A stretch of DNA of 36,624 nucleotides, from the NCBI GenBank assembly GCA_001179505.1, contig CDMY01000649.1, positions 1 to 36,624 of the forward strand. Reading direction: 5' to 3'. The DNA is from Vitrella brassicaformis CCMP3155. Taxonomy: Eukaryota; Protista; Chromerida. Positions 249 through 36,624 of this stretch are shown here, piece after piece. The translations under genes were made by a program, and so were the position numbers. A model generated the notes under the pieces. That model made no database searches. It was not told where the DNA came from and worked only from the letters and a program-made list of their open reading frames with translations. The number at the start of each line of letters is the position of its first letter. Within the stretch, counting starts at the first letter, position 1.

Positions 249-1423
249 ATGAGCAGCCAGGGTGCCCACCAGCCACCGATGCCAGTCCCCTCTACAGGTA
301 CATCACATCACGTGCGAAGGAAGGATGCCGCCCGCAGATCAGATCCACACATGATTGATCAATCTACGTCGGGACATACAGTGTGTACGCCCACCACACC
401 ACGCCGTCTGTCTGTTTCTCTTTCTGCTGTGTGCCGTGGTTTGCAGGTGCTGTGTGCGTTAAGCAGGAGCCTCAGGCTGACAGCACAGCCCCGCGAGCCA
501 CCCCAGACCTCACTGTGTCATCCCACGGTATTTCTGGGCAGTCATCAGCCCACACCACCGACCGCTCCTCACCCACCCCCTGCCCACCTGGCCACCATCA
601 CGATGCGACCTCTTCCTGTGGTCCTCCTGGTGCTTGTGGTCGTGAGCGTGTCGAGACCGAAGCGGCGCAGACCCGGAGGGGCGGTGGTGGTCAGGGCGAG
701 GCCGCATCGTCACCACGTCACTTGAAAGGTCAGTCAGCCGCACACGACGCATTGCATTGCCGGCCCTCACGGCACCCATCGGTCCACAAATGCAATGCAA
801 CACATTGTTTATTGTGCGGACGTGGATGTATTTGCAATGTGTTGTGTGGCGTGGCGTGGCAGCGACGGAGCTTGAGGACTTTGAGGACGACGACGATGAT
901 GATGATGATGAGGCGGAGGAGGAGGAGGAGGAGGAGCAGGATGAGATGACATTGCTGATATTCCGCAGCAGCGCCGCAGCGGCGGCGGCACAAATGGCCA
1001 CATCTGTGCCTCCAGGCCTCTCAGGTACGCCGGTCGATTCTGAAAGGCGTCACAGACTGGGCACTGTCCACCATGGCCTGTCTGTCTCTCCGGGCCCTTG
1101 GCCAGATGCGGTGGCTGGCCGTGAGGACGAGCAGATGGGCGATGGCGAGCAGCAAGAGGAGGGAGATGAGGTAGCGGCCTCTGCTGCTGCCACCAATGGT
1201 CCGCCTGTGCCGCTTTGGCGGATGCCATTTCCCCCATTCCCCTTCCGCCCACCACTCGACGGTACGCGCAGACAGACAGACGGACGGACGGACGGATGGA
1301 TGGACGGACGGACGGACGGACAGACGGATGGATGGACGGACATGTGGCCGACGTCTGCGGACAGGTCGCCGCGGTGTGGTGATGGGTGGCATGGGTGTCC
1401 CCCCGCCGACGCCAGGTGAATGA
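249..1423 (+). CDS. Low-complexity acidic/Pro-rich coding segment (exons ~249-297, 447-728, 863-1261, 1365-1415/1423); either the 5' part of the multi-AP2 gene or a separate short gene
   Basis: GT-AG phase-1 introns join MSSQGAHQPPMPVPST / GAVCVKQEPQ...RHLK / ATELEDFEDDDD...PPLD / GRRGVVMGGMGVPPPTP in one frame. The link to the exon at 1531 is not phase-consistent (see findings). Confidence 0.6.
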
Positions 1424-1530
1424 ATGAATGAATGAATTAATTAGTGAATGCACACACATACAATATCCGTCCATCGAGGGATGTGTTGTGGTTGCTGCCT
1501 CGTTGTGTGTTGTGGTCCTCTCCTCTGAGG

Positions 1531-4500
1531 ATGGATGAAGATCACGAGAATGAGGCTGAGGGCGACGGCGATGAAGAGCACACGCCCGACGGACCAGGTG
1601 GGTGCCGTGCCCACAGACCCTCAGACAGGCAGCCTAGCCAGACGTGTCGCGTCGTGCATGTTGCTTCTAAGGTGGATTGCATAAATGTGCTGTGTGTGCA
1701 GATCTCGCCGCTGCCGCTGATGGGCATCTCGAGGACGTCTGCACTTCCTGCGAGCGCCACTACAAGAGCGTCAGGGATAAAGTCAAGAGCAGCGCCTTCT
1801 CCCGCCTCAACCATCATCCTCACGTGACCGCCACCTTCACCCCCGCCCCCTCTCCCCCACCAAACACAGACGAAGTCACTGTCACCATAGGGCCATTTCT
1901 CGCGGGGGATGCGAGCGACCAAAGCAGCCACAGCCACAGCGACGGCTACTTTGTGCGGGGCCTGGCCACCCGACCAAAGGGCAGCAAGAGGTGGAGCTTC
2001 TCGAAGTCGCTCACTTACAAGGTCAGGAGTGTGCTCGACCACGGCGTTGAGAAGTTTCGCTTCACTGAGGAGGCCGGCAGGCGCATCATCGGCCGCAAAA
2101 TACGGCACGGTGAGCGGACAATCCGATCTCTGTGGCGACATCCATCCCTGGTGTCTGTGTATTTGGTTCCTCCAGATGACTGCGAGATGTTAGCCGCCAC
2201 CCCGCCGGCGCCCCGCCCTCGCCATGTCCCACCCTCTGCCAGTGGATCTGCAGCCGAGGCCGCAGCAATGCGTGACGTGACCCACCATCCCCCAGCCACC
2301 GACCCTTCTCCGACTGGGGAGGTGGCCGAGAGAAGGGCCGGCGAACCCATTGAGGACTGGCAGGCGTGGTGGGAGAATGCAATCGACGACTTAGACGACA
2401 GCAGCGACGAGGGCGGCCAGGGAGAGGGGGAGGGCGGCGATGCGGCAGAGGAGCACGCTGAGCGCACTCCTCAGCCGGGTGTCCAAGTCAAGACTGAGCG
2501 TGGCCCCCGCGACGGTGGCAGAACCGGCAGGCAGCAGCAGCAGAAACAGCAGCACCACGACCAAGCACACACACCGGAGGGTACCTACCTTCCAGCAGCA
2601 CCACCACCAGCGGCAGCGGCAGCGGCAGCAGCAGCATCCTCATGCCATGGGCCACAGAGAAACAGCAATCCTCACTACCTTGGTTCGTTTGGTGGTGCAA
2701 CAGCGCTGGACAAGAACACCCTTAACCGCGGAGGGAGGCGCGGGGAGTCACCACAAGCAGCAGCTGCTGCTGCGTCAAGTACTGGTGATGGTGGCAGAGA
2801 GGGCGGTTTGCTGCGGGCGCTGCATCGGTTGCCGAGGAAGGAGAAAGGTGGCGGCGATGGGGAGGTCGGGATGGACGTTGACCACAAGGCGCGCAAGAGG
2901 GGCCGAGAGCCATCTTCAGGTGCGTTTACGGAGCCTATACAATACACCCACATGCGCACCTGTGTGTGCTGGTTTTGTGTGCGTCATGTGCAGGTTCGTT
3001 TGGCGGTGAGTTGGTGGACGCCAAGGACGCCCTCGACGTCTACGCCAAGCAGAGGCTGGCGGAGCTGCGCCGCCTCAATGGCTACGGCCGAGTAGGCTAC
3101 GGCATCTACATCGTGTGGCATCAGTTCACGTGGATGGTCCGAGTCGGCAGCCGATCAGGCCGATTAGCTGCCTGCGACACCATCAGCCCGTCAAGCCGCA
3201 CCCAAGAGGCCATCGACAAGGCTCTCGAGGAGGCCGTCGACACCCGCAACCGGCTGGCCGAGACGGCTGGGCTTCCCCCCATCCGGTCGCTGCATTCGCG
3301 GCATTGCGGTGGCGATGAGGGCGAGGGAGACGAGCAGCTGCCGGAGGGCGCGTCTGAGGACGAGAAGGGAGCTTGTGCGCTGGACAAGAAGACCTTCAAT
3401 GCCTACGGCAAGGAGCGGCAGGCCGCGCTGCGTCGCCTGAATGGCGTCAGGGGCACACACATCATGTGGCACCACAACGGATGGTTCATTCAGATCCGCC
3501 TCGACAACCAGCAAAAATCATACAGAATCGGAGTGCGAGGCCGCACACGGCAGGCCATTGACAAGGCCCTGCAGGAGGCAGTCGAGAAGCGCAATCGGCT
3601 GGCCAAGACGGTTGGCCTTCCCCCTCTCCGCTATCCCCCTGGCGAGGGCGAGGAGGAAGAGGGCAATGATGGCGATGAGATGGACATGGCCGAGCATGAC
3701 GACGAGGAGGGAGAGGAAGGGGAACACGACCAAAAGGCGCGGAAGAGGCGGAAACGGAAAGGGGGCCTTCTCGACGGCTACGCCGAGGACCGGATGAGCG
3801 AGTTGCGTCATCTCAACCGCCACATGAGCACCTACATCACTTGGCACCCCGATGGCAGATGGCAAGTCTGTGTCCGCCACGACGGCAAATCGCACTACGC
3901 TACCGTCCGCCCTCGAGCCCGTACCCGAGAGGCCATCGACGAAGCCCTCGATGAGGCCGTCGACAAGCGCAACAAATTGCTCGACACAATGGGCTGCCCA
4001 CCCATCCAGCCGCTGCCTTCGCGATGTCGGCAGAGAGGGGGCGAGGGGGACGGCGAGGGTGAGGATGGCGAGATCGAGGGCAGCAGCGTCGCGCCTGAGG
4101 AAGACCAAGACGACGAACAAGACAGTGAGCCATACAAAGGGAGGGGGGATGCCTGGATGCATGGAAAGATGGAGGGGTGTGTGGTGTTCAGGCTCGTTTG
4201 GTGGTGCCTCGGTGGACAAGGACGCCCTCGACCGCTACGCCAGGCAGCGGCTGGCAGATTTGCGTCGCCTCAACGTCCCCGAGGACATCAATTTCAGGTG
4301 GCACAAGTTCGCCTGGTCGATCCAGTTCCGCCACAAAGGAGGACGGCTCTGGCGCACCTTCCCCCCGCTACCCTTCACACAAGAGGCCATCGACAAGGCC
4401 CTCGAGGAGGCAGTGCAGGCCCGCAACCAATTGGCCAGCGACCTGGGCCGTCCACCCATCCGGTCGCTGCCGTCGGGCCATGGCCAGGGCGTCGCTGAGG

Positions 4501-6621
4501 GATCGGGGGAGGCCCATGGCGACGGCGAGGATGAGATGGAGGGCAGTGTCGGGGCGCCTGAGGTCGAGGAAGAGGAGGAGCAAGACGAGACAGACGGTGA
4601 GCCACACAGAGGGAGGGAGGGAGGGAGGGAGGGGTGCACGGGACAAACATATGGATGCATGTGCGCGCACTTGTCGGTTCAATGCAGAAGAGTACGACCG
4701 CAAGCCGCAGAAGAGGGCAAGAGGGAGAGAGACCCCTGCAGGTGGGTGACCATGCAACACAGATATGAATGGATCACCCACCCATCCACCCTATCACAGA
4801 CGTGTGGTGGTTTTGTGTGCCGGTGTTCAGGCTCGTCTGCTGATCTGGAGAAGGACGCCCTCGACCGCTACGCCAAGCAGCGCCTGGCCGAGCTGCGTCG
4901 CCTTAACGAGACCGATAGAATCAACGTCAGCTGGTACGACTTCGCATGGTCAATTCAACTCCGCCAAGGCAGCGGACGACGACGTGCCTCGCACGCCATC
5001 AACCCACGCGCCCGCACACTACAGGCCATCGACAAGGCCCTCGAGGAGGCCGTTGACAAGCGCAACCGCATGGCCAAGACGATGGGGTGTCCTCCCATCC
5101 GGTCGCTGCCGTCGGGCTGCCCGGCTGGCACCGGTGGCGTCGCTGAGGGGTCAGGAGAGGCCGGTGGCCAGGGTGACAATGACGCCGAGCATGGCCGGCT
5201 GGCGCGCGTCGGCGACGAGGAAGAGGAAGACGACGGGCACGACCATACAGGCGGTGAGCCACACAGTCACAGAGGGGGAGAGATCCATGGATGCGGTGCA
5301 CGACACAAAACACAACAGCGGATGGGACGGATGTGCGCACATCAATCACATTTGCTGGTTCAATGCGTTCAATGCAGAGCAATACGACCGCAAGCCGCAG
5401 AAAAGGGCGAGAGGGACAGAGGCCTCTGCAGGTGGGTGCCACAGGACATCGTGAGAGTCACACGCGTGTGGTTTTGTCTGCTACTGTTCAGGCTCGTCTG
5501 CTGCTGCTGCTGCTGCTGCGGTGGACAGGGACGCCCTCGACCGCTACGCCAAGCAGCGGCTGGCCGAGTTGCGTCGCCTCAATGAAAGCGGTAGAACACA
5601 GGACAGACACACGGTGGGTGTGGCTTTGTATGCGACTTACTGGTCAGGCTCCTCTGCTGCTGCGGCGGCGGCGGCGGCGGCGGCGGTGGACAGGGACGCC
5701 CTCGACGTCTACGCCAAGCAGCGGCTGGCGGAGCTGCGCCGCCTCAACGTCTCCGAGAGGATCAACGTCACCTGGTACGACTCCACGTGGGTGATCCGCT
5801 TCCGCCAAGGCAGTGGACACCGTGCCTCCCACGCCATCAACCCCCAAGCCCGCACACTAGAGGGCATCGACAAGGCCCTCGAGAAGGCCGTCGAGACTCG
5901 CAATCGGCTGGCCAAGACGATCGGTAGTCCCCCCATCCAGTCGCTCTGGTCGGACCACCCCGCTGGCGCCGAGGAGGCCAACGAGGGTGAGGGAGATGGT
6001 CATGGTGACTACGAGGTCGTCATTGAGGGCAGCGGCGGCGAGCCTGAGAATGGGGACGGGCGCGAGAAAGAGGAACAAGAAGATGATGGCGATCGTGATG
6101 ATGCCGGGCTGAGCAGCGAGAAGATACAGAAGGCCGTGGAGGTCAGGAACAAGACGCTCAAGGACAGTCCGCCCCTGTTGCTGCCCCAATGCCTCACCGC
6201 TTCGCCCACCAGCCCCGCTGCGCCGCCAGTAGCACCACCACCACCACCACCATCAGCAGCAGCTGCTGATGCATCGGCTCGTCACGACACCAACGAGCAG
6301 CAGGACCAGGCAGCCGAGATGGCTGAGGAGGGCGGGCCCATGATGGTAGGCGGGGAGCGGGGCAATGGTGATGAGCCGGGTGGTGTGCTGAATGGCTGTG
6401 ATCCGTCGTCGCCTGCTGATCAGGTGAGGGGCATGGGACGACTGATGACAGACAGGAAGACAGACAGAGAGGCAGGCAGACAGAGACACGTCCACTCACC
6501 TTGTTGTTGTTTGTTTGTGTTGTGTGTCGGTGGGTGGGCGGGTGCGGTGCGGTACGGTGCATTTATTCAGGGTGTTGCAGCCGGCGACATGCAGCCACGC
6601 GATATGGACATGGAGGTATAG
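1531..6621 (+). CDS. Putative multi-AP2-like DNA-binding protein: unknown N-terminal domain plus six AP2-like modules (exons 1531-1597, 1702-2109, 2176-~2919, 2994-4124, 4192-4596, 4688-4741, 4831-5253, 5378-5431, 5492-5590, 5648-6423, 6571-6621)
   Basis: Six ~85-aa repeats of the form DALDxYAKQRLAELRRLN-x-(I/V)xW-x3-W-x-I/V-x-R...-R-T-x-EAIDKALEEAVxxRNxL...PPIRSL, with acidic linkers and basic NLS-like motifs (KARKRGR, KARKRRKRK, KPQKRAR). Exon lengths 1131, 405, 54, 423, 54 and 99 are all multiples of 3 with phase-1 boundaries. The three-strand plus helix pattern with Trp resembles AP2/ApiAP2; this is pattern recognition, no HMM was run. Confidence 0.75.
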
Positions 6622-8929: not shown

Positions 8930-11520
8930 TCACTCTTTCTCGTGCGGACCTGTGGGAATCGCCTGGTTGAGGTCGGGGATCAGCCATGCGTCGCTGCCCA
9001 TCCGGATGTGAGCCAGGGCCGCCGCCTGGGGATTGCCTGCGACTACACCGTCGCCCTGGGGCTCCTCAGTGCTGTAAAGGCCGATGGATATTTCCCCCCG
9101 GTAGTGCTTGCTCATGCGCACGAATGCCGCGAAGGCGTCGTCTGGTCCGTCACCACGGAAGAGGACGAATCGGCATCGGTGAGGGTTCTCGCAGCCGGCG
9201 CTGTCGGTGCTGCCGATGGTGCGGCCGCCCCACAGTGGCGTCCCGGGCCGTTGGGCGGTGAGCTCACCGATGCGGGAGGAGGGAGCAGACGACGGAGGAT
9301 GACGGGCCACCGTCACACTCTCCCAAGGTCCCCCATGGAGCATACTAGAAGATCAAAGGAGGGAAGGCACGGAATGCGACACGCTGCCTTATTGTGATCG
9401 CATGCGTTTGTTGCGTACATACCGAGTCATCACAATCTCGCGGAAGCTACGATACTCGTGATAGATGCCTGCAGACGGACAGACAGACGAACAGACAGAC
9501 AGACAGACAGACGGACATCGAAAAGTGAGCATAACACCTGCTCATGCCTCTTACATCGGCACGGAGGGTCGCTGGGGTCGAAGGTATCTCTGTACTCGGC
9601 GGGCACTGTCTCAGGTTTGTGCACCTTCACCGGTATCCCGCCCAGCCGCTCCCGACAAACAACCCATGTCCGACCCCCCCACACAACCTCACCCGCCGCC
9701 CCCCGTGTCAGCCCCAAGTCGCCATCTAGGCGATTGCCGAAGAGGCCATACTGCCGCATGCTCGCCAGTCGGCTGTCGATATCCTCCTTGGTGCCCGCAC
9801 GCCTCACATCGCCCTCACCCAGCTGGAGGGGCAGCTGTTGGATCCGCTTGAGGTTCTTNNNNNNNNNNNNNNNNNNNNNNNNNNNNNNNNNNNNNNNNNN
9901 NNNNNNNNNNNNNNNNNNNNNNNNNNNNNNNNNNNNNNNNNNNNNNNNNNNNNNNNNNNNNNNNNNNNNNNNNNNNNNNNNNNNNNNNNNNNNNNNNNNN
10001 NNNNNNNNNNNNNNNNNNNNNNNNNNNNNNNNNNNNNNNNNNNNNNNNNNNNNNNNNNNNNNNNNNNNNNNNNNNNNNNNNNNNNNNNNNNNNNNNNNNN
10101 NNNNNNNNNNNNNNNNNNNNNNNNNNNNNNNNNNNNNNNNNNNNNNNNNNNNNNNNNNGAGCTCACCGATGCGGGAGGAGGGAGCAGACGACGGAGGATG
10201 ACGGGCCACCGTCACACTCTCCCAAGGTCCCCCATGGAGCATACTAGAAGATCAAAGGAGGGAAGGCACGGAATGCGACACGCTGCCTTATTGTGATCGC
10301 ATGCGTTTGTTGCGTACATACCGAGTCATCACAATCTCGCGGAAGCTACGATACTCGTGATAGATGCCTGCAGACGGACAGACAGACGAACAGACAGACA
10401 GACAGACAGACGGACATCGAAAAGTGAGCATAACACCTGCTCATGCCTCTTACATCGGCACGGAGGGTCGCTGGGGTCGAAGGTATCTCTGTACTCGGCG
10501 GGCACTGTCTCAGGTTTGTGCACCTTCACCGGTATCCCGCCCAGCCGCTCCCGACAAACAACCCATGTCCGACCCCCCCACACAACCTCACCCGCCGCCC
10601 CCCGTGTCAGCCCCAAGTCGCCATCTAGGCGATTGCCGAAGAGGCCATACTGCCGCATGCTCGCCAGTCGGCTGTCGATATCCTCCTTGGTGCCCGCACG
10701 CCTCACATCGCCCTCACCCAGCTGGAGGGGCAGCTGTTGGATCCGCTTGAGGTTCTTAGCAAGCCGCAGCAGCGCCACACTGCCCGACCAGTCGCCCCCC
10801 ACCTCCAGCACGTACCGCAGACGGATCAGCCGAAACACACGCCGGCGACTGGTGGACTGACGCAGCGTTTGGTAGCCGATGATGTTCTCCAGTCCCTTGT
10901 TCCTGATGAGGCCGTCGATGGCCGACGTCACGGCGGTCTCGACTGCACTGCTGCCGGCGTGTGACGTGCTGGCCATGGTGTTGCTGAGCTGGGTGAGGGT
11001 GGTGGCCTCCTGGCCCTCTGGACCGATCAATTTGGCGAGTGTGTGGTGGAGCTCCGGTGGCAGCCTGCCGTACAGCCGCTGCACGAACAAGTGTGGGCTG
11101 GAGGGGACGGCACCACCACCACCTCCACCACCTCCACCAGGAGCGGCGGCGGATGACGACGTGAGTGCGAACTTCTTGAAGTTGCCCTCCAGCTGCACAC
11201 ATCGCATCGCATCAATCACACAAACGCATCCACAGAGGGCAAGATGAACACACAGCATCCATCCACTGATGCCCACCCACCCACCAGAGCCAATCCTTTG
11301 AGATCCGACACGGCAGAATTGTAAGCCTCCATGGACGCGAAGAGCTTCGAGAGCGCACCGTTGGCCATCTTGACTCGAGATGCTCTCATGGGCGACTCCT
11401 GCACACACACACACACACATGCCGCATTCACTCACACACGTCACACTTACACATCCCTCTCAGGTCGCTCACCGCGGCCTTCGTCGACAGGTAATTGAGT
11501 GCCTCCGGCGGCCCCTGACA
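8930..11520 (-). CDS. Lineage-expanded hypothetical superfamily member A (intron-containing), interrupted in this assembly by a gap and a 599-bp overlap
   Basis: Exons splice in frame: GPPEALNYLSTKAA / ESPMRASRVKMANG...SDLKGLAL / LEGNFKKF...LRYVLEVGGDWSGSVALLRLAK...MRQYGLFG...DTFDPSDPPCR / CIYHEYRSFREIVMTR / MLHGGPWES...ISIGLYSTEEP...WLIPDLNQAIPT. Motifs are shared with the genes at 17421 and 19075. Confidence 0.7.
9260..10757. other. Assembly artefact: 9260-9858 is repeated at 10159-10757 around a 300-N gap (9859-10158)
   Basis: Both copies start GAGCTCACCGATGCGGGAGG and end GGATCCGCTTGAGGTTCTT, offset 899. No differences seen by eye, including the GACA microsatellite. Each copy ends exactly at a gap edge. 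Confidence 0.9.
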
Positions 11521-12015: not shown

Positions 12016-14793
12016 ATGAGCAGTCGGGCCGGCGCAAGAGGTACGACACGCAAGGATCTGTGCGTATATACACGCCTCTGCGTTGCTTCCGTACGTCGAT
12101 CGTTCCTCTATGTGCGTCTGTATATGCCTTCGTTGTGGTTTTAGTGACCGACTTTGAGGAGGAGAATGACAGTGATGAACAACACAGGCCCGACGGACCA
12201 GCAGGTGCGCATACACACTCAGGCAGGAAGGCAAGGCAGACGTGTCATCTTGGTTGCATGTGCCATACATGTAGATCTGGCTGCTGCTGGTGGCGGTGAT
12301 CCGGAGGACGTCTGTACTTCCTGCGAGCGCCACTACATGCACCTCAAGGACAGCGTCAAGGGCAGCGCCTTCTCCCGCCTCAACCAACACCCTCACGTGA
12401 CGGCCACCTTCACCCCCGCCCCCTCCCCCTCTCCCACGTCAAACATCGACGCCGTCAACGTCACCATAGGGCCGTTTCTCGCTGGGAGTGGGAGCGGCCC
12501 AAACAGCCACAGCTACTATGTCCATGGCGTGGCCACCCGCACCAAAGGCACCAAGAAGGCGTGGAGCTTCTCCCCGTCGCTCACTTACAAGGTCAAGAGT
12601 GTGCTCAAGCACGGTGTTGAGAAGTTCCGCTTCACTGAGGAGGCCGGCAGGCGCATCATCGGCCGCAAAATACCACACGGTGAGCGGAGAATCTGATGGA
12701 TGGCCGTTGGTGAATGGATGGATGAATGGATTCAACTCATCCAGTGGGTGGTGGGTCTGTCCGCGAGAGCAATCATGACGACAAGAACGGCGCTGGGAAC
12801 GGCGATGAAGGCAAGCACACACACAGACACACACACACACGCAGAAAGACGCAAAGCGATGGTGGACAAGTGTGCGTGTCTGTCATGTAGCCGAGGAGGA
12901 GCAGAGAGCACCAGCTGTACCTGTGCCTGCCGCACGGCAGCCCGATGGCGTCACCTTTGCCTTATCGGTGAAGAAGCGGGACAAAGGTGAGTGAGTGAGT
13001 GAGTGAGTGACGGACGAAGGAACAATCAGATGGGGTGGGGGAGACGCTCTCCTTTTGTGTGGGGTGTGGCTGGCTGCATTCAGGTGACGGCGATCTCGTG
13101 CTCGACGTCAAGGCGTCGGCCAAGGCCAGGCGCGCAACCCAACCTGGTGAGTCAGTGGAAGAGAGGAAGGATGGATGGATGGATGCAGTGGCTGACGAGC
13201 AGATGGGCAATGGAGACGCAGCGGCGTCTGAACCAGCCCAACCGCCGCAATGGCATGTCCAGGGTCCTCTGCCTGCCCCTGGCCCTCTCGTGGCTGCGCC
13301 CCGTTTGTCTCTTGGATCACAGTCGCACCATCCGCAGCCACATCCCAGCCGACTCGGGCAGGAGTGGTGGGAGCGTGCAATCGACGACTTCGAGGACAGC
13401 AGCGACGAGGGCGGCCAGGGAGAGGGGGAGGGCGGCGATGCGGCGGAGGAGCACGCTGAGGGCATACCACCACCACCACCAACACCACCACCACAGCAGC
13501 AGCAGCAGCATGAGCAGGCCGAAGATGCAGCAGAGATGGCCGACGCCCCACCACACACGGTGAGGCATCCAGGCAGGCAACGACATTGGCCGTCAATGTG
13601 GGTCTGGGTGCGTTCAGGGCCCACTGCTTCTTCCGCCTACTTCGGCAGCAGCTGTATCCCTCCATGGCCCATCCGCCCCTCCCCCTCCCCCTCCCCTCCT
13701 CGCGGCTGCCGTGCGCCCCCCTGTCCGGCCCCCCACACCCCGTGTGTCTGCTGCCGAGGACGCAGCAATGCCTGACGCCACCGACCACCAGCACCATGGC
13801 GTCGTTTTCCCACCACTGAACCGCCAGCCCCCAGATGCCGATCCCTCTCCGCAAGAGGACCAGCCGATGCATAACGGGCTGGAAGTGGACCGGCCGATGG
13901 ATGGCAGCAGGCAGGCACCACCAGCAGCACCGTCCAGCATCCCAGCCAGTGCTCCTCCTGCCGTCGCCAAGCAGGAGCCACGGGTGCCAAACAGGACTAC
14001 CAACCAGCCGTCCCGACCGCCACAACCACCGAAAGCAGCAGCGGCCGCTGAGCCGGCCAAGAGGGAGAGAACGGAAGAGGGAGTCAAAATTGAGCCTGGG
14101 CACCACACTACCGAGGGAGAGAAAGAGGGGCCTTCTCCTCCCGGCTGTGTCGAGATACCTCTTGGCGACGTCGACCACACCGGCCTGGTCAATTCCTTGA
14201 AGCGAGATGAGAAGAGGCAGCTGGCCAAGGACGTCCTGCAGATCATCCGAGAGGTACCTATCCTATCATTCATCGCAACACACACAGACACACTGACACA
14301 TCGTTGCTGTTGCGATGTACGTTTCTCTATCAGTGTGGCTTCAAGGGTTCCCACTTGTCCGACATGAGCGGCACGACGCCCGGCGACATCCATGAGAGGT
14401 GGTTTCGCGGCAAGCCCGAGAAGCTGGGGGCGTCGGGTGACCTCAGCGAGTGGCTCGGGCAGCTCTTCAACACACGCGGTGTAAGCCATCCACTCACCAA
14501 ACCAGCCACAAGTATAGTATCCTCCCATTGCTCTCTCTCTCTCTCTCTCTCTGCGCGCGCGTGTGTGTGTGTGGGTGCACAGGGGCGTGTGTGGGTGCCC
14601 GTAGCAGGGCCGTCAGCCCAGCCGCAGCCGCAGCAAGGCCATCCAAAAGCACCTTCTGGTGCGCGCACACACACAGGAGTGGACAGACAGACACAGATTC
14701 TGCTCCTTCGTGCGTGCGGTGCGTCTGTGTGTAGGCGGGGGCATGTCGCAGTCCATTGACAGAGTCGGACGCCGCCCTGACAGCATGGAGTAG
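12016..14793 (+). CDS. Paralog of the multi-AP2 gene N-terminus with a SAM-like C-terminal region (exons ~12016-12040, 12145-12204, 12275-12679, ~12745-12810, 12891-~12986, 13084-13146, 13188-13559, ~13618-14253, 14334-14480, ~14583-14655, ~14734-14793)
   Basis: Starts MSSRAGAR/VTDFEEENDSDEQHRPDGPA/DLAAAGGGDPEDVCTSCERHY...GRRIIGRKIPH, closely matching 1702-2109 with the same two flanking intron positions. It also shares WWERAIDDFEDSSDEGGQGEGEGGDAAEEHAE. The C-terminal LAKDVLQIIRECGFKGSHLSDM...KLGASGDLSEWLGQLF looks SAM-like (weak). Confidence 0.75.
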
Positions 14794-28362: not shown

Positions 28363-31300
28363 ATGGCACATCAGCAGCAACAACAACAACAACCATCAGA
28401 GGGCCCTGTATTTGACTATCGGTTGCCGTCGTACGACCCCAGCTTCATCTTTGCACAGAGAACCCTGCGCAAACTGCAAGTAGGTACCTACTTATGTGCG
28501 TGTCCATCTACTGCAGTCAACGATGAGCACTCGTGTGTGATGCCATGCACGTACGTTGTGTGGCTGCCAGTGCATGTTGAAGGAGGGCCTCATTGACAGC
28601 GGCGGGAGAGTCACCACACAACACGGTCTGACAGTCAGGCTTTTTTGCAATGTGTGCCTGCAGGGCAGATACATATATACACGTGGTTGTGTGTGTCGAT
28701 CCGTCTTGTCTTGTGTGCACTGGCTGCAGATGGGAGTGTGTATCGCCACCACAGCGGCACCCACCAGCGACGCCACCAGCCGAGAGACATCCTGCACTTC
28801 CCCCTCACACTCGACGCACAAGTAACCACACCACATGTACCCTCACTCGCCCCCACACACTCACTGGCAGTCGTCGGGTCTGCTTGCTATGTCTTCAGGT
28901 GGTCCCCAACAAGCGTCAGCAGCCGTCTTTCGCCCCGAACCCCTACTCGCAGCCAGTGCCGGGGTCCGTGCGCATCAACAGGTTCCTGCAGAAGGTAGAC
29001 ATCAATTGAGATGAATGGAATGACAGACAGACAGACAGACAGAGAGGGACAGACAGACACAACAGACAGACAGACAGACAGAGGCTCTTGTGATGTGAAC
29101 TCACGGCACGGCACTCATCCCCTCCCCTGCCTGCCTGCAGATGGAGAAAGAGCTTCGGAAAGAGATGGACAACACATACACCTATGCACAAAGGTGCATG
29201 GCTTAGTGGGCGGCTGGGTGGGGTGGGCGGGGACGTGGCTCGCTGGTGGGTGGCGTGGTGCGCATTTGTGTGTGTGAGTGAAATGCAGGCGCAGGAGTCC
29301 GCCCGCCACACACAGGAAAAGGAACGGCTGCACTCTCGTCACGGACACACACACAAGGTACACTACCTGCCCTTCCAAACATCCATCCCTCCATCCGCTC
29401 ACTCATTTCTGTCTGTCTGTCTGTCTGCCTGCACACCCCACCCTACCCAGCCCCTTCACCACCACCGACCCCAGTGTCGCCCCGTGTGACCACACGGGCA
29501 TCGGCAGCACCTTCCTGACCCAGATGATGGGAGCACACTACGACAGCTGCCCAAACACGCCCTACAGGGGACACCAAAGGTACCTAGCTTGTGACATGTA
29601 TGGGGGCCAACACGCATTCTGTCCACGCGTGTGTGTGTGTGTGCATACGTATACACAGGAGGGCCCCCCGTGGTCACTCTCAAGCCACCCGGCCACGGTC
29701 GGCCTGCAATCGCCCTCCTTACACACGGGCCGACAGGTGACTGACCTACCCCCCACAATAATATACACACATCACATGTGTGTGTCTCTCATCCCTTCCT
29801 TGATCGTGCCTGCCGGGCCACCCATCCCATCGATGGCATCCATCCATCAGTGTGCCGCCCTCCCGCGCCCGCCGTACGGCCAACAGGCGGAGCAAAAGCG
29901 TCGAAAACACTCCACTGGCACGTACGATACGATACGAACGGACAATGTCTGCCTGCGTCTAGTCTACACACCCACTGTTGCACTGCACGCCCTTCTGCAT
30001 GGCATGCAGTGGGTGACGATCCACACGCATCCTTCTTCCGGTCGCTGCGAGGAGCCAGGTCGCCCGACGGGAGTGTGCGGATGGACTTCTCGATGCTGAG
30101 GATTCGCAAGACGCCCAACCCCAACCCAATACTCACATGTACTCATTCATTGCCCCATCCACACACACAAGACACCCGCATCCACCGAGTCGTCCATGTC
30201 ATGTTGTGTTGTGTGTCCGTTCGTTCCTATCTAGGTGTGTCAGAGTGGCTCAGAGACACGGGAAGGAGACGCGTCTTCGTCATTGAGCGGGTGGGTGGGT
30301 GGGTGCGGACAGTACAGTCAGTACATGCATCAAATTCACTGTCTGTCTTGTGGCCACACGCCATGTGTGTTAAGTTAACCAACCATCCATCCAATTTATT
30401 CATTGGTGAATGTAGGCCAATGGTGCTCTCTATCGGCCCACTGCAGCGGACGAGAGCGACTCCGGTGCGGTGCGCACCGCATGTCATGTGTGATGGATGG
30501 ATGGATGGATGGATGATGTGGGAATAAATGTGGCTGGCTTGGCTTGGCTTCATGAAGTGAATGTGTGTGTGTATTTGATTTGTATGTATACAGGTGAGCG
30601 TCTCTTGCGGCCAAACGGCGTTGAGGAGGCAGGTATGTATGTAACTGACCACACTGGCTGGACACCGTGGATTGACACACAACTAACTACAGGCAGCGCA
30701 GCGTTCGGTTCGCTTGTGTGTGGTTATGGTATGACTGCAGTGAGGTCGACGCTTCTCTCGATGCACTGGCTGGGTACGGTCGGTACCCACGCACAGCACA
30801 CCTACAGTACACACATTAATTATACTTATTGTATGATTGATATGATGTGTGTCACTACCCCATGTGATGTGTACAGAGGCGCCGCCCTCTCAGTATCAGT
30901 CGCCCTTCTTTGACCTCAAGTGGTCCATACGGGACGACCAGTCGGAGTACAACCGCCTCATCGACGGTCAGCACACATGCATACAATGCAATGCAGCTAT
31001 ACGCTATCGACTCGACTCGACAAGGAAGGCAGCGTATACATTTCCCTGTGTCTCTGTGTGTGTGTGCGTGTGTGTGTAGGTCAGTGCTTCAATCACTTTC
31101 GTGGAAACAGGGAGCTGACGACCAAGGGGGGCCTCACGCGCACACTGCTGCGCTACTCGTCTGAGGCGCTCGTCAACACAGACACGTTCTTCCCGACATC
31201 GTACGACCTCGGTAATATATAACCACACACGTACATACCTACGCACGCNNNNNNNNNNNNNNNNNNNNNNNNNNNNNNNNNNNNNNNNNNNNNNNNNNNN

Positions 31301-34300
31301 NNNNNNNNNNNNNNNNNNNNNNNNNNNNNNNNNNNNNNNNNNNNNNNNNNNNNNNNNNNNNNNNNNNNNNNNNNNNNNNNNNNNNNNNNNNNNNNNNNNN
31401 NNNNNNNNNNNNNNNNNNNNNNNNNNNNNNNNNNNNNNNNNNNNNNNNNNNNNNNNNNNNNNNNNNNNNNNNNNNNNNNNNNNNNNNNNNNNNNNNNNNN
31501 NNNNNNNNNNNNNNNNNNNNNNNNNNNNNNNNNNNNNNNNNNNNNNNNGGGGGGGGGGGGGGGGGGTCTGGTGTCTTGTGTGCGCAGGGAATGCGATTGA
31601 CCGGCAGGATTTCCTCCACTGCTTTCGGGTGTCGGCTGCTTATGGTATGTACGCCTACACCACACACTTTCTGATGTGTGTGTGTCTCTCTCTCTCTGTG
31701 TGTGTGTGTGTGTGTGTCTCTGTGCCTGTGGGCGTGGCGAGCAGGTGTGTTGAAGCGGCATCTGTCGATCCGCGCTCTCCTCATTCGCACCTGTACGCAC
31801 AGATACGATACGTGTGTTGGTGGTGTGTGTGCATTGCATTGGTGTCTATGCATTGCATCCCATGTGTATGGACTGCCAGGCGGCAGTGTGGAGGACACGT
31901 ACGCCCACTATGCGCGGCTGGACCGACCAAAGACGCACACAAATGGTGGTGTTTGTAGTCACAGACACAGCACATATCAACAACAGAACAAAGGATAAAA
32001 TGTCTCTGTAAAGGTTCATCTGGCCAGCAACATCAGCAGGAGTGGCCGTGTGTGTACTACTGCAACCGTCGGCTGCTGCAGCTGGCATACAAGATTGTGG
32101 AACAATTCGCAGCTGAAGTGGACCCAAATGAACTCAGAGAAGTACACACACACACACAGACACACACACACACTCATCATCAAAGACGCCCGTTGCGTCT
32201 CTGTGTGTGTTTGGGGACAAATGGATAGTCGGCCGATGTGTTTCTGACCGACACCGAGTGGATGGCCCTCCTGCACTACGCACAAGTGAGCAGGCAGAGA
32301 AGCCCATCAAGCCAAGCCCATCACATCTATGTCCCTCCCTGTGTGTGTCAATCACTACCTGCAGTGTCTGCAGGACGACCTCTACAGAGAGGAGTCGCCC
32401 TACGCACAGCCGCCATTCGTCAGATACATACGCGAACGGGTGAGGCTATCCTATTTTCACCGACTCATGCATGCTGCATCCAATTACCCTTTCTCTTACC
32501 TTTTCCCGCTTTCCAGGGGGTGCCCGATGCCGATTGGGGCCCTCCCACACACGGTCAGAAAGCAGTGGGGGTGTTGTGCCGTTCTCTGTACATGAATGAA
32601 TGAGTGTTGTATTCTTTTCGTGTGTGTGTCCCTCCCTTCATGAGCAGCTTTCGATGTCTCTGTTGAGCGTCTGATGGACGATCTGGCGGAGCGGTGGCCG
32701 CAGATGGGCTTACACGGATCCATGTGCACCATCTGGATCCTCAAACCATCGTCCTGCTCCAAGGCCTCGGGGGTGCAGTGTCTCAGCGACCATGCCGAGA
32801 TATGCAAGGCGGGATCGCAGCTGTCCAACCGAATCATACAAAAGTACACGCACATGCTCGACATGCGCATAGAATCTCATCACAGCATCTCTCTCTCTCT
32901 CTTTCTCTCTCTCTCTGTGTGTGTGTGTGTGTGTGTGTAGGTATATTGAGCGGCCTTTGTTGGTGGCGAGTGGGCGAAAATTCGACGTGCGACAGTGGGT
33001 ACGATCCGTGCATGACATCTGACATCCACACAGACAGACAGACAGACAGAAAACTCTCTGCTCGCGTGTGTCAATGGCTTTCTTTGTTTCTTTGTTTCTT
33101 TCCCAGGTGTTGGTCTCGTCCATCAGCCCACTCACCATCTACATGTGCGTTGCGTACCTAAAGACATACACACATCCCTGACTGCAAATCAAATGAGGCC
33201 GTCCGATGGATGATCATTTGTGTGTGTTGTCTGTGTGTCTTACTTACATTCACTCACTGCAATGCATTGCAGGCACACTCAGCCGTATCTTCGCTTGTGC
33301 AACTTGCCGTTCGATTTGGGGGACCTCAAAAACAGACAGAAACACATATCCAACTGGGAGGTAAGTTCAGTAGGTGGGGTGGGCAAGGCAAAGCAGACAC
33401 ACTGTCTGGCACGGCACGTCGTCTTGTGTGTACTGCACACACAGGTCAACCGTGGCGGCTCGTATGTCTGCGAGGGCGCCGTCAAACCACTGTACGTTCC
33501 GTATACACCCACCCGGGGACACGAAGATGTGTGTGCGTGTGACTGGTCATTGTCCGTTGGTTGATGCGATGCAGGTCTGCGCTGATCGACGAGCTGCCGA
33601 AGGGTGCGTGGGAAGGCCGTTTGCTGCCGCAAATACGATACATCATACTACACGTGAGCTGAGCACGTCAGCCTAGCCTCCACTCGTCCGTACAGATCGG
33701 ATCATCTCTCATGTGCGTGCTGTGCCGACACATTAATGGCACGGATGGATGCAGACCATTCTCGCCGCGACACATTCGCTGACTGGCCGGGAAAAATCTT
33801 TTGAGCTCTATGGTAATTAAACCATAAATGCATGGGCATCCTCTCTCCTAAAATGGAGCATTGTTGTGCACATGCGTGCAGGTTTTGACATTTTGATCGA
33901 CGAGGATCTGCACCCCTGGCTGCTGGAGGTCAACCTCTCCCCCGCGTGCTCCCCGCGGACGGCATGGCTGAAGGAAATGTGCACTCACATGGCCAGAGGC
34001 ATGATTGACATCGCATTACACGTACACACAGACAAACGCACACAGATGTCTAGACAGGGATGGTGCACCTTACGCACAAGTCTGTGCGTGCAGGGTCGGT
34101 GCGAAGGTGGGTCTCCATGGCAGCTCATATTGGATGAAGACCCCACAGGCATGCCATGCACAGCACTCCTGTCTGTCTGCACGCCATGTGCAGTGCATGT
34201 GTGTGGGTAATGTATGTATGGCATGTACGTATGTGTAGATGAGTGGGAGCAGCCCAAGATGTGCGTGCCGGGCAGCGATGAGACATACACACACAAGTGA

Positions 34301-36411
34301 GTGAGGTCAAGCAAAGGAGACAGCAAAGCAGACACTCCCACGCACCATGCATACATGTTTGCATGTAAGCAGGATCGACAAGGAGACTTCTTCCGCCGAC
34401 GACAAATCCACATGCACCTCACGTAAGCAAACAGAAACACATCCATGAGTGGATGGGATGTGATGATTGATGTGTTGCAGCCCCCATGTCGATTGTGCCT
34501 TATGCTGACGAGCCCCTGAAGGTCACGGGCAGGCGGATCGACATAGAGGTGGAGCGGCGCTTCGACACTAGAGTGACGCGACACACGGCGGCCATCGTCA
34601 TACAGAGACACGTCATGTAAGTTCGCGCACACATTCATGAAGGCGGTTGAGGTGTGCCCAGCCCACACACGGGCATGTGTGTGTGGATGGGATGCAGCCC
34701 CTACCTGCAGCGGATTCGCATTGACCACTTCATCAAGATGCCCGCCATCGTACGCATCCAGAAAGCCATCCGCAGATATATCGGTCTGAACACTCAATCA
34801 TCGATGGCCCAACTCATTGCACAGTGTGTGTGTCTTTGTATGTGCTGTCTTTGTGCGAGCAGCAAGGCGTCGGATGGCGTGTCTGCGGCTGAACAGCCTG
34901 CTGTCGATGCTGCAGCCACTCGGCAGACAATACATACTCAGAAAACGGTTCCAGCGTCAGCAGCAGCAGCAGCCGCCGTCAGTGCCCGTGCCCCCTCCCC
35001 CGCCCCCTCCCTCCCCACTTGTCGTCATGAACAGGGCCGCAATACGCATACAGAGGTACATACAATCGACATGTCTCACATGTCTACCCACACACATTGA
35101 TGTGTTCTGCAATTGCAGCCACTACAGGGGTCATCTGACCAGAAGGCGAAGCAAACAGACCAGGGAGGCAATCGCACGACGGCGAGAAACACCCGACCCC
35201 CCTGTGGCCCCCTCCCTCTCACTCTCACCGCCCACCTCCCCCCGACCCCATACACACCATGCACACGCACGCCCATCGCCGGCTGTCTCGCCGCGTGTGC
35301 GGACGGCATACTCATACAAGCGGGTCCCTCGGCCGTCGCGCTATCGTGTCCCAATGAGCATCGCTTTGGAAAGCGACCACTCGAGTGTGTCTCCGGAAAG
35401 ATCACCCGAACGAAAAAGGTCATCCGTAGGGGGACACTCACCCACACGGAGAGGGAAAAAGGGGTTTCGGACAGCACACGTGTGTGTGTATGTGTGTGTA
35501 TGTGTGTGTACGCAGACGACCGTCGCGTGTCAGGATGTGTCTCGAGAGCGACTCTTCCCGAGACGTCTCGCGCCAGCCATCCCCTCTTCTCCTACGCCAA
35601 AGCAACGCGTACCCCGTGTCGATATGCAACAGCCCTGTTGCACTGTCACCCGTCCGCAACTCGCCCAAGAGCGTGAGGCGACGGTCGATTGTGGGCTGGC
35701 CTTATTTGGAGGGGCTCGAAGAGAAGGACTGGAAGCCGATTGTGTTGAGGGCCCATCAGGGGAGGGTGTATGTCAGCCCTAGGAAATGATTCTGTCTGTG
35801 TCTCTCGTGTGGCTGTGTGTGTTCGTCTACACTTGTTGCATCTGTGTGTTACCGATGCGTTGTTTGCTGCCAGGTGGCGATAGGAGCTGTGTGTTGGCGA
35901 ACGAGACATATGATTGGACCGGTTTCCTTTTTCTGTGCAAAGATGAAAATAGACAAAGCCACGTTGCACTTGAGAGGCAACACAGCCACAGCAACAGCCG
36001 CAGCCGCCGCTCTGTCGCTGTGTGTGTCACCGTTCGCCTGCAGGTATCCACACATGCTCGCAACAAGGCGAGAGACCTTCAAGTTGTGGAGGTGAGTAGC
36101 AGCGGAAAAACGTGGCCAGCGAATCCATAACGTGTCTGTCCGTTTTGTTTCTTCGATTCATCAGTCAGTTCTCCATTGCGCATATGCATATGTCTCTTTC
36201 AGTCGGTCTTTTTGTAACAGTGCATTGCATCGTGTCGTTCGGCCATCGTTCGGTGTCTTCATCTGCACTGAAGCTTGGTCAATTGGGCTGGTCCAAATGG
36301 ATGTGTCTCTGTCGGTTTCAGGGCTGGGAAGCTAGTCAATCCGCTAAAGCACGACCCCGAAGGAGTCCTTTTTGCCTGCAGCAAACAGCATGTCTCAATT
36401 TTAGGGCTTAG
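28363..36411 (+). CDS. TTLL3: Tubulin-tyrosine ligase-like protein, TTLL3/TTLL8 (tubulin monoglycylase) type, with C-terminal IQ motifs; many exons; stop at 36128-36130 or 36409-36411
   Basis: FNHFRGNRELTTKGGL...FFPTSYDL; RQDFLHCFRVSAA; FLTDTEWMALL; WPQMGLHGSMCTIWILKP; IIQKY/IERPLLVASGRKFDVRQW/VLVSSISPLTIY; YLRLCNLPF; FELYG/FDILIDEDLHPWLLEVNLSPA. IQ-like motifs AIVRIQKAIRRYIG (~34745-34790) and AAIRIQRY (~35035-35060). Confidence 0.88.
31249..31548. other. Assembly gap (300 N) inside a TTLL intron, followed by an 18-nt G run (31549-31566)
   Basis: N run seen directly; coding motifs on both sides follow the expected TTLL3 order. Confidence 0.95.
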
Positions 36412-36624
36412 GGTTTAGGGCTTAGAGCTTAGGGCTTAGGGTTTAGGGCTTAGGGTTTAGGGCTTAGGGTTTTAGGTTAAGGGTTAGGGTTTAGGGTTTA
36501 GGGTTTAGGGTTTAGGGTTTAGGGTTTAGGGTTTAGGGTTTAGGGTTTAGGGTTTAGGGTTTAGGGTTTAGGGTTTAGGGTTTAGGGTTTAGGGTTTAGG
36601 GTTTAGGGTTTAGGGTTTAGGGTT
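36400..36624 (+). repeat. Telomeric repeat array (TTTAGGG)n with proximal variant repeats
   Basis: 36400-36489 mixes TTTAGGG, CTTAGGG, CTTAGAG, TTTTAGG, TTAAGGG and TTAGGG. 36490-36624 is pure TTTAGGG. The G-rich strand points 3' toward the end of the window. Confidence 0.98.

What the first reader, a model, noticed from the sequence alone, without database searches (positions are those of the whole stretch)
2994..5950. Six-module AP2-like array with an extra conserved N-terminal helix
Six repeats (starting ~3025, 3380, 3767, 4220, 4854, 5695) each pair a DALDxYAKQRLAELRRLN helix with an AP2-like three-strand/helix unit ending AIDKALEEAVxxRNxL. The strand residues, which read DNA in AP2 domains, differ strongly between modules while the helices are conserved. 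That is the pattern expected of a modular multi-specificity DNA reader. ApiAP2 factors usually have only one to a few AP2 domains and lack this helix. The AP2 assignment is my pattern match.
Basis: partly seen in the sequence, partly recalled or inferred. Interest (0 to 1): 0.75.

Follow-up and report, generated by a model that had tools for sequence, protein, structure and literature searches.

The report
Divergent six-module AP2-like array gene
A gene of the alga Vitrella brassicaformis, a free-living relative of malaria parasites, strings together six copies of a very divergent AP2-type DNA-binding fold, each carrying an extra front helix; standard domain scans miss them, so it is an unannotated member of a known regulator family rather than a new kind of system.

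Summary
The window holds six ~90-aa modules plus a seventh, helix-only copy, inside an annotated 15-exon gene (CEM28282.1, 1652 aa, "uncharacterized"). The genome is Vitrella brassicaformis CCMP3155.

The AP2 reading is supported, but only as remote homology:
- Pfam AP2 finds none of the modules.
- A profile of the modules matches a profile of genuine Vitrella AP2 domains (hhalign 93%, E 3.4e-7; 200 shuffled controls peak at 17.5 against 35.4).
- The module profile lands on Pfam-certified AP2 domains in dinoflagellate and Picomonas proteins.

The helices are conserved among the six modules (65% identity) and the sheet is not (30%). The sheet is kept between same-position modules of three paralogous genes (70%; dN/dS 0.4-0.5).

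- Arrays of six or more AP2 domains are not rare in this genome.
- The extra helix also occurs in relatives from Cryptosporidium, Piridium and a dinoflagellate.

DNA binding is inferred, not shown. The scan had already met the same divergent AP2 family on other DNA of this genome (s1-212012, s1-226915).

The parts
249..6621 (+). Whole gene, 15 annotated exons, product CEM28282.1 / UniRef A0A0G4GFJ2 (P0002, 1652 aa, 'uncharacterized protein')
   Evidence: The database protein lies on a contig of 36624 b. It maps exactly onto window frames.
1701..2108 (+). N-terminal ~135-aa Vitrella family domain of unknown fold (aa 253-388)
2920..2993 (+). Phase-1 intron (GT..AG) ahead of the exon holding modules 1-3
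   Evidence: Read from the sequence. Agrees with the annotated protein.
2994..4126 (+). Exon encoding modules 1-3 with acidic linkers and a KARKRRKRK basic cluster
3017..3298 (+). Module 1 (type 1)
   Evidence: HMM hit E 1.9e-40. Groups with C653_1 and C465_1 in the tree.
3380..3640 (+). Module 2 (type 2), net charge +13
3755..4021 (+). Module 3 (type 3)
4212..4475 (+). Module 4 (type 4), in its own exon 4192-4597
4687..4743 (+). Annotated mini-exon with an NLS-like RKPQKRARG peptide; repeated at 5377-5433
   Evidence: Direct repeat D9, 89% identity..
4845..5114 (+). Module 5 (type 5), the sequence used for the structure model
5377..5433 (+). Second copy of the NLS-like mini-exon
5521..5598 (+). 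Seventh, helix-only copy (N-terminal helix without sheet), followed by a possible short intron 5591-5646 that the annotation reads through
   Evidence: HMM positions 1-26, E 3.4e-8..
5686..5952 (+). Module 6 (type 5, recent duplicate of module 5; dS 0.38)
5953..6423 (+). Acidic, proline-rich C-terminal tail (the 173-aa tail has net charge -29) with a degenerate remnant of the C-terminal helix near 6112-6174
   Evidence: Weak matches to the helix at the same relative place in the paralogues.

Best explanation
This is a real, intact, multi-exon nuclear gene of Vitrella brassicaformis. Its product carries six tandem copies of a divergent AP2-superfamily domain. Each module is a three-stranded sheet plus C-terminal helix, which is the AP2 core. 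An extra amphipathic N-terminal helix is predicted to pack with it into a helix-sheet-helix unit. The two conserved helices and the alternating hydrophobic strand residues form the common scaffold. The other face of the sheet is polar, basic and different in each module type. That is the face that reads the DNA major groove in AP2/ERF and ApiAP2 proteins. The most likely function is therefore a nuclear DNA-binding protein. Its five module types would each contact a different short DNA element, strung together by long acidic linkers and imported through its basic NLS-like clusters. Shown here: the repeat anatomy, the gene model, the fold prediction, the homology to AP2 and the positional conservation of module types across paralogues. 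Inferred: nuclear location, DNA rather than RNA as the ligand, and different specificities per module.
For: Identity of the genome: 72,700,666 b in 1064 contigs equals the published Vitrella CCMP3155 assembly (PMC4501334).

Fold: AF2 pLDDT 91, pTM 0.82, with H3-21, E28-31, E34-41, E46-52 and H59-80.

Homology to AP2:
- hhalign of the module profile A3 against 19 canonical Vitrella AP2 domains gives 93% probability and E 3.4e-7 over AP2 positions 4-52.
- The narrow profile A1 gives 53% and E 1.3e-4.
- 200 column-shuffled controls have a mean score of 8.5 and a maximum of 17.5, against 35.4 and 24.9 observed.
- The aligned columns keep the AP2 core residues: V in strand 1, W in strand 2, a hydrophobic residue in strand 3, and A..A..R in the helix.
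- Profile A1 contains no AP2 sequence, yet it hits the Pfam-certified AP2 domain of the Pyrodinium protein P0148 and the same domains as the AP2 profile in P0014.
- A3 hits the six Pfam AP2 domains of Picomonas P0022.

Specificity surface: sheet identity is 0.30 between modules but 0.70 between positional orthologues in three paralogues. Sheet dN/dS is 0.40-0.53. Buried and exposed columns alternate. Each sheet segment has net charge +3 to +5, while linkers are -7 to -15.

Chromatin context of relatives: modules occur together with canonical AP2 (P0004, P0137), Chromo (P0007) and a SANT-named protein (P0016).

NLS-like clusters.
Against: - No module reaches any Pfam AP2 score.
- No coordinates were available, so the face covered by the N-terminal helix is inferred from the strand pattern and from which folds align. 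It was not seen directly.
- dN/dS of 0.5-0.6 indicates only moderate constraint.
- No transcript-derived copy of this particular protein was found; its cluster has a single member from the genome annotation.
- The closest solved relatives, the mitoribosomal AP2 proteins, do not act as transcription factors (PMC11652630).
- One family member is fused to an RNA-binding RAP domain (P0139).
Confidence: 0.6

Rival explanations
1. The modules are AP2-derived but bind RNA, or scaffold a ribonucleoprotein, as the four mitochondrial AP2 proteins of Toxoplasma do in the mitoribosome.
For: Two of the three best structural neighbours are exactly those mitoribosomal AP2 proteins, and the third, 9g6k_UG, is a chain of the same mitoribosome that I did not identify. 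They are shown not to act as transcription factors (PMC11652630). The helix-sheet-helix topology equals that of dsRBD and resembles HPF, both RNA binders. Vitrella P0139 joins one module to a RAP domain.
Against: The Vitrella orthologues of the four mitoribosomal AP2 proteins are other proteins (CEM08875.1, CEM02754, CEL93516.1, CEM17867.1; PMC11742926 supplement). This protein has NLS-like clusters and long acidic linkers. Most partner domains of relatives are chromatin or DNA domains (AP2, Chromo, SANT). In the mitoribosome the AP2 folds serve mainly as scaffolds from which extensions contact rRNA, rather than using their canonical DNA-binding surface, and nothing comparable was seen here: the regions between these modules are acidic.
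Confidence: 0.13
2. The fold is an unrelated alpha-beta-beta-beta-alpha sandwich (dsRBD-, HPF- or frataxin-like), and the similarity to AP2 is convergent.
Confidence: 0.07
3. The array is a fast-evolving, weakly constrained lineage-specific gene family with no nucleic-acid ligand. The conserved helices would be the functional surface (protein-protein contacts or oligomerisation) and the sheet would merely be tolerant of change.
For: dN/dS is 0.5-0.6 and dS only 0.2-0.3 between paralogues. Decayed copies exist: C911 carries a TGA and the fifth module of C461 is split between frames. Surface residues of the helices (R13, R18, D63, R73, N74) are invariant in the 20 modules of the four arrays, more than a pure scaffold needs. 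No expression evidence exists for this gene.
Against: The sheet is as constrained as the helices between positional orthologues (identity 0.70 against 0.77-0.78; dN/dS 0.40-0.53 against 0.51-0.60). The exposed sheet face is basic in every module. All six modules and all exons are open.
Confidence: 0.15

Closest known systems
AP2/ERF domain (Pfam PF00847), in particular apicomplexan and chromerid ApiAP2 domains
   Same: Three-stranded sheet followed by a helix of the same length and order. The conserved V (strand 1), W (strand 2), hydrophobic residue (strand 3) and A..A..R (helix) are in register. There is profile-profile homology, and modules co-occur with canonical AP2 domains in the same Vitrella proteins.
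   Different: Below every Pfam threshold. The G of the GV motif is lost. A conserved 19-residue N-terminal helix and a C-terminal R-N-x-L-A...G-x-P-P extension are added, so the module is ~90 aa instead of ~55-60.
Mitoribosomal AP2 proteins of Toxoplasma gondii (mS130/AP2IX-6, mL161/AP2XII-10; PDB 9hqv, 9i05)
   Different: They carry one or two AP2 domains in small mitochondrial proteins that are built into the ribosome. Their Vitrella orthologues are other genes. No six-module array or acidic linkers are described for them in the parts of the two papers I read.
Multi-AP2 proteins: PfSIP2 tandem AP2 (PDB 6sy0), and canonical AP2 arrays of Vitrella (six in tandem on contig C781) and Picomonas (P0022, six AP2)
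   Same: Several AP2-type domains in one chain. In SIP2 each domain reads its own half-site, which is the model for a multi-site reader.
   Different: Those arrays use canonical, Pfam-detectable domains with short linkers. Here the domains are the helix-extended divergent type, separated by 27-129-aa mostly acidic linkers.
Other divergent AP2 arrays of the same genome already met by this scan (s1-212012, s1-226915)
   Same: Same species and the same kind of Pfam-invisible AP2-like module in long arrays. P0004 has ten such modules plus two canonical AP2 domains.
   Different: Different genes and subfamilies. The present four-gene subfamily (C649, C653, C465, C461) has the most conserved helices and its own ~135-aa N-terminal domain.

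Membership tests
AP2/ERF domain superfamily (PF00847; AP2-integrase DNA-binding fold) | Three-stranded antiparallel sheet followed by one helix packing on it | tested here: met
   AF2 model pLDDT 91: E28-31, E34-41, E46-52, H59-80. AP2 chains are among the best neighbours.
AP2/ERF domain superfamily (PF00847; AP2-integrase DNA-binding fold) | Score above the curated Pfam PF00847 gathering threshold | tested here: not met
   No AP2 hit at E up to 10 for three ORFs, 21 single modules or the full protein. The same model finds at least 150 domains elsewhere in this genome.
AP2/ERF domain superfamily (PF00847; AP2-integrase DNA-binding fold) | Statistically supported sequence homology to bona fide AP2 domains | tested here: met
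   hhalign 93%, E 3.4e-7, score 35.4 against a shuffled maximum of 17.5. Module-only profile A1 hits the Pfam AP2 domain of P0148. A3 hits the six AP2 domains of P0022.
AP2/ERF domain superfamily (PF00847; AP2-integrase DNA-binding fold) | Conserved core residues in register (V strand 1, W strand 2, hydrophobic strand 3, A..A..R in helix) | tested here: met
   Alignment. Invariant or near-invariant W35, A65, A69 and R73 in the modules against W15, A40, A44 and R48 in canonical domains. The G of the GV motif is not kept.
AP2/ERF domain superfamily (PF00847; AP2-integrase DNA-binding fold) | Sequence-specific binding of double-stranded DNA through the sheet | not testable with these tools
   Only indirect support: the exposed sheet columns are basic and module-specific.
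ApiAP2 transcription factors | Nuclear protein regulating transcription | not testable with these tools
   NLS-like clusters KARKRRKRK and RKPQKRARG (twice) and acidic linkers are suggestive only.
Mitoribosomal AP2 proteins (mtAP2-1 to 4) | Orthology to mS130, mL143, mL153 or mL161 | tested here: not met
   The Vitrella orthologues listed in the PMC11742926 supplement are CEM17867.1, CEM08875.1, CEM02754 and CEL93516.1, not CEM28282.1.
dsRBD (double-stranded RNA-binding domain) | alpha-beta-beta-beta-alpha fold with dsrm sequence signature | tested here: inconclusive
HPF/YfiA ribosome hibernation factors | beta-alpha-beta-beta-beta-alpha fold and family sequence signature | tested here: not met

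The most novel reading that the evidence does not exclude
The helix-extended AP2 module is a distinct, ancient myzozoan domain family (Vitrella, Piridium, Cryptosporidium, dinoflagellates) with two functional surfaces. One is a variable sheet that reads nucleic acid. The other is an invariant helical face (R13, R18, D63, R73, N74) that docks a common partner. Arrays such as this one would then act as natural programmable multi-site readers that recruit one effector to composite DNA addresses.
Probability: 0.15. Interest if true: 0.65.

Novelty: new variant of a known kind. Interest (0 to 1): 0.4.

Why it matters
ApiAP2 proteins are the main specific transcription factors of malaria parasites and their relatives. 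Their numbers in chromerids have been counted with AP2 profile HMMs (PMC4501334). This gene and its relatives show that Vitrella holds a further layer of AP2-derived domains that Pfam's AP2 model misses. There are at least about 100 matches in the genome and 145 representative proteins in 1.84 billion. Those counts also take in some canonical, Pfam-detectable AP2 domains, because the wide profile reaches them too. The domains often form long arrays or sit beside chromatin domains.

If the modules bind DNA, the repertoire of DNA readers at the base of the apicomplexan lineage is larger and more modular than reported. The array would also offer a natural set of module types with different sheets on a constant scaffold, useful for studying how AP2 specificity is encoded.

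It is not a new kind of system. The scan had already found the same family elsewhere in this genome.

Tried and rejected
- Pfam scans of the ORFs, of 21 single modules and of the full protein gave no AP2 and nothing else above threshold.
- A profile search of PDB sequences gave nothing below E 0.36.
- Foldseek against PDB gave nothing below E 0.3.
- The word-based protein search with the three-module exon returned one hit only, a near-identical fragment of a paralogue.
- The subtelomeric-family idea was dropped. The window ends in TTTAGGG repeats, but contigs C461 and C465, which hold paralogues, do not appear where they should in the ordered list of telomere-repeat hits. C653 could not be judged because the list was cut.
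- Diversifying selection on the sheet was rejected: dN/dS is 0.40-0.53, no higher than in the helices.
- A literature search for the accession numbers found nothing, and a keyword search for divergent chromerid AP2 arrays turned up no description of this family.
Full report
**What is there.** The window is the whole contig C649 of an assembly with 72,700,666 bases in 1064 contigs. These are exactly the figures published for Vitrella brassicaformis CCMP3155 (PMC4501334). Between 2994 and 5952 the + strand encodes six ~90-aa modules: 3017-3298, 3380-3640, 3755-4021, 4212-4475, 4845-5114 and 5686-5952. A seventh copy at 5521-5598 has only the first helix. Module 1 matches the other five at E 1.5e-15 to 5.9e-26, so the repeat is far beyond chance.

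The modules sit in three frames because the gene has GT..AG introns of phase 1. The public annotation has a 15-exon gene at 249-6621 whose product (P0002 = CEM28282.1, UniRef A0A0G4GFJ2, 1652 aa, "uncharacterized protein") maps exactly onto the window. I searched exon by exon by reference and used the database's own protein for whole-protein statistics.

**Family in the genome.** Three further loci carry arrays of the same modules: C653 (5 modules), C465 (5) and C461 (4-5). There are also single or decayed copies on C879, C295 and C911. A maximum-likelihood tree groups modules by position, not by gene. Types 1, 2 and 3 each form a well-supported clade across C649, C653 and C465 (type 2 also holds a C461 module), type 5 a weaker one (82/87), and the type-4 modules lie unresolved at the base of the tree. 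Window modules 5 and 6 are a later duplicate of type 5. The five-type array therefore predates the gene duplications.

**Is it AP2?**
- Pfam says no. No AP2 hit appears at E up to 10 for the ORFs, for any of 21 modules or for the full protein. The same model finds at least 150 domains elsewhere in this genome.
- Remote-homology methods say yes. An alignment of 29 modules (A3, including divergent ones from C628, C698, C320 and C456) was compared with an alignment of 19 canonical Vitrella AP2 domains (A2). The result is 93% probability and E 3.4e-7 over AP2 positions 4-52.
- The narrow 21-module alignment A1 gives 53% and E 1.3e-4.
- Two hundred column-shuffled versions of A2 score 8.5 +/- 2.0 with a maximum of 17.5, against 35.4 and 24.9 observed. 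The reversed alignment scores 10.3.
- The register keeps the AP2 core: V of strand 1, W of strand 2, a hydrophobic residue of strand 3, and A..A..R of the helix.

An all-against-library HMM search with A3 found 145 representative proteins at E <= 1e-3 among 1.84 billion. In several of them the module profile falls on Pfam-certified AP2 domains. Examples are Pyrodinium P0148 (Pfam AP2 323-372; A1 312-378; AP2 profile 318-373), P0014, and the six AP2 domains of Picomonas P0022.

**Structure.** The AlphaFold2 model of module 5, built with A1 as its alignment, is confident (pLDDT 91, pTM 0.82). It has H3-21, E28-31, E34-41, E46-52 and H59-80. Foldseek finds nothing significant.

**The extra helix and the variable sheet.** Among the six window modules, mean identity is 0.65 in helix 1, 0.30 in the sheet region and 0.65 in helix 2. 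Within the strands, conserved hydrophobic columns (28, 30, 35, 37, 39, 52) alternate with high-entropy polar or basic ones (29, 36, 41, 48, 50). This is the pattern of a sheet with one buried and one exposed face.

Only one face is hydrophobic, and the full-length structural matches are folds with both helices on one face. I therefore infer that both helices cover the same side and that the variable basic side is free. I could not inspect coordinates.

The variable sheet is not drifting freely:
- Between positional orthologues in the three paralogues it is 70% identical.
- Concatenated dN/dS is 0.40-0.53 for the sheet, 0.51-0.60 for the helices and 0.50-0.62 overall, at dS 0.21-0.28.

The constraint is real but moderate, and there is no sign of diversifying selection.

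**Rest of the protein.**
- Modules carry net charge +2 to +13, and their sheet segments +3 to +5.
- The linkers (27-129 aa) carry -7 to -15, and the 173-aa tail -29.
- NLS-like clusters occur before module 3 (KARKRRKRK) and in two repeated mini-exons (RKPQKRARG).
- The N-terminal ~135-aa domain (1701-2108) belongs to a Vitrella family of about ten copies, one of them at 12256-12696 in this window. It folds confidently in part (pLDDT 79) but matches no Pfam family or solved fold.

**Range and partners of the family.** Named hits are mostly Vitrella. Others come from Piridium (P0067), the dinoflagellates Polarella, Pyrodinium, Fugacium and Prorocentrum, and gastric Cryptosporidium species (P0035).

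In Cryptosporidium, Piridium and Fugacium the alignment extends over the N-terminal helix. The helix-plus-AP2 unit is therefore older than Vitrella and not peculiar to this gene.

Within Vitrella the module occurs as follows:
- nine times in P0146;
- ten times in P0004, together with two canonical AP2 domains;
- three times in P0007, which also gives a weak Chromo-domain hit (E 0.0012, below the Pfam cut-off) and is named a Chromo protein by UniRef;
- once in P0016, a protein named SANT-domain-containing;
- once in P0139, next to a RAP domain (E 5.6e-5, just under the cut-off; named RAP by UniRef).

A canonical six-AP2 tandem exists on C781. So "six modules" is not exceptional here.

**Mechanism and rivals.** The best-supported reading is a nuclear multi-AP2 DNA-binding protein in which five module types present different basic sheet faces on a constant helical scaffold (about 0.6). 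AP2 ancestry itself I put near 0.85-0.9.

The main rival is an RNA or ribonucleoprotein role, as in the mitoribosomal AP2 proteins, which are not transcription factors (PMC11652630). Against it: the Vitrella orthologues of those proteins are other genes, and this protein has NLS-like and acidic features. A non-AP2 convergent sandwich is unlikely given the sequence links. A weakly constrained family whose conserved helices are the real functional surface cannot be excluded.

**Novelty.** No paper mentions these accession numbers, and a keyword search turned up no description of the family. UniProt-style names call the protein uncharacterized. The kind of system is known: ApiAP2 expansions in chromerids (PMC4501334) and AP2 repurposing (PMC11742926). 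The scan has already reported the same divergent family on other DNA of this genome (s1-212012, s1-226915). I rate it a new variant of a known kind, of moderate interest.

**Limits.** No model coordinates were available. No expression data for this gene could be reached. E-values from my sandbox HMM runs refer to tiny databases and serve only to locate domains.

Noticed in passing
window 36400-36624: The contig ends in (TTTAGGG)n telomere repeats, preceded by degenerate variants (GGGCTTA units). The array gene therefore lies about 30 kb from a chromosome end.
   Followed up: partly
window 12256-12696: A second copy (75% identical, one in-frame TGA in the raw match) of the ~135-aa N-terminal domain heads a neighbouring gene with a different C-terminal part. 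The acidic WWE-x-AIDD...SSDEGGQGEGEGG stretch is also shared (ORF 13035-13775).
   Followed up: partly
window 4598-4830 and 5255-5491: The two introns after modules 4 and 5 are themselves repeats (families D9, D10, D6). Each contains a 57-nt annotated mini-exon encoding an NLS-like peptide. The whole unit of module, linker, intron and mini-exon was duplicated together.
   Followed up: partly
window 5521-5646: A helix-only pseudo-module is followed by a plausible 56-nt GT..AG intron that the public annotation reads through as coding. Either splice form keeps the frame.
   Followed up: no
G000 C781:223045-224617: Six canonical, Pfam-positive AP2 domains lie in tandem within 1.6 kb. Four-domain arrays occur on C708 (two loci) and C640.
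   Followed up: no
L043 (G000 C628:17000-25000, - strand): An array of about nine to ten very divergent helix-AP2 modules (protein CEM27122.1, 1793 aa) has no Pfam domain at all.
   Followed up: partly
P0139 (Vitrella CEM09858.1, aa 1674-1820): One helix-AP2 module sits directly after a RAP (RNA-binding) domain at the C-terminus of an 1825-aa protein. This hints that some family members work on RNA.
   Followed up: no
G000 C911:8433-8679 and C461:6202-6463: Decayed copies of the module: one carries an in-frame TGA and one is split between two frames.
   Followed up: no
window about 9500-10200 and 31300-31800: Runs of N (assembly gaps) interrupt ORFs on both strands.
   Followed up: no
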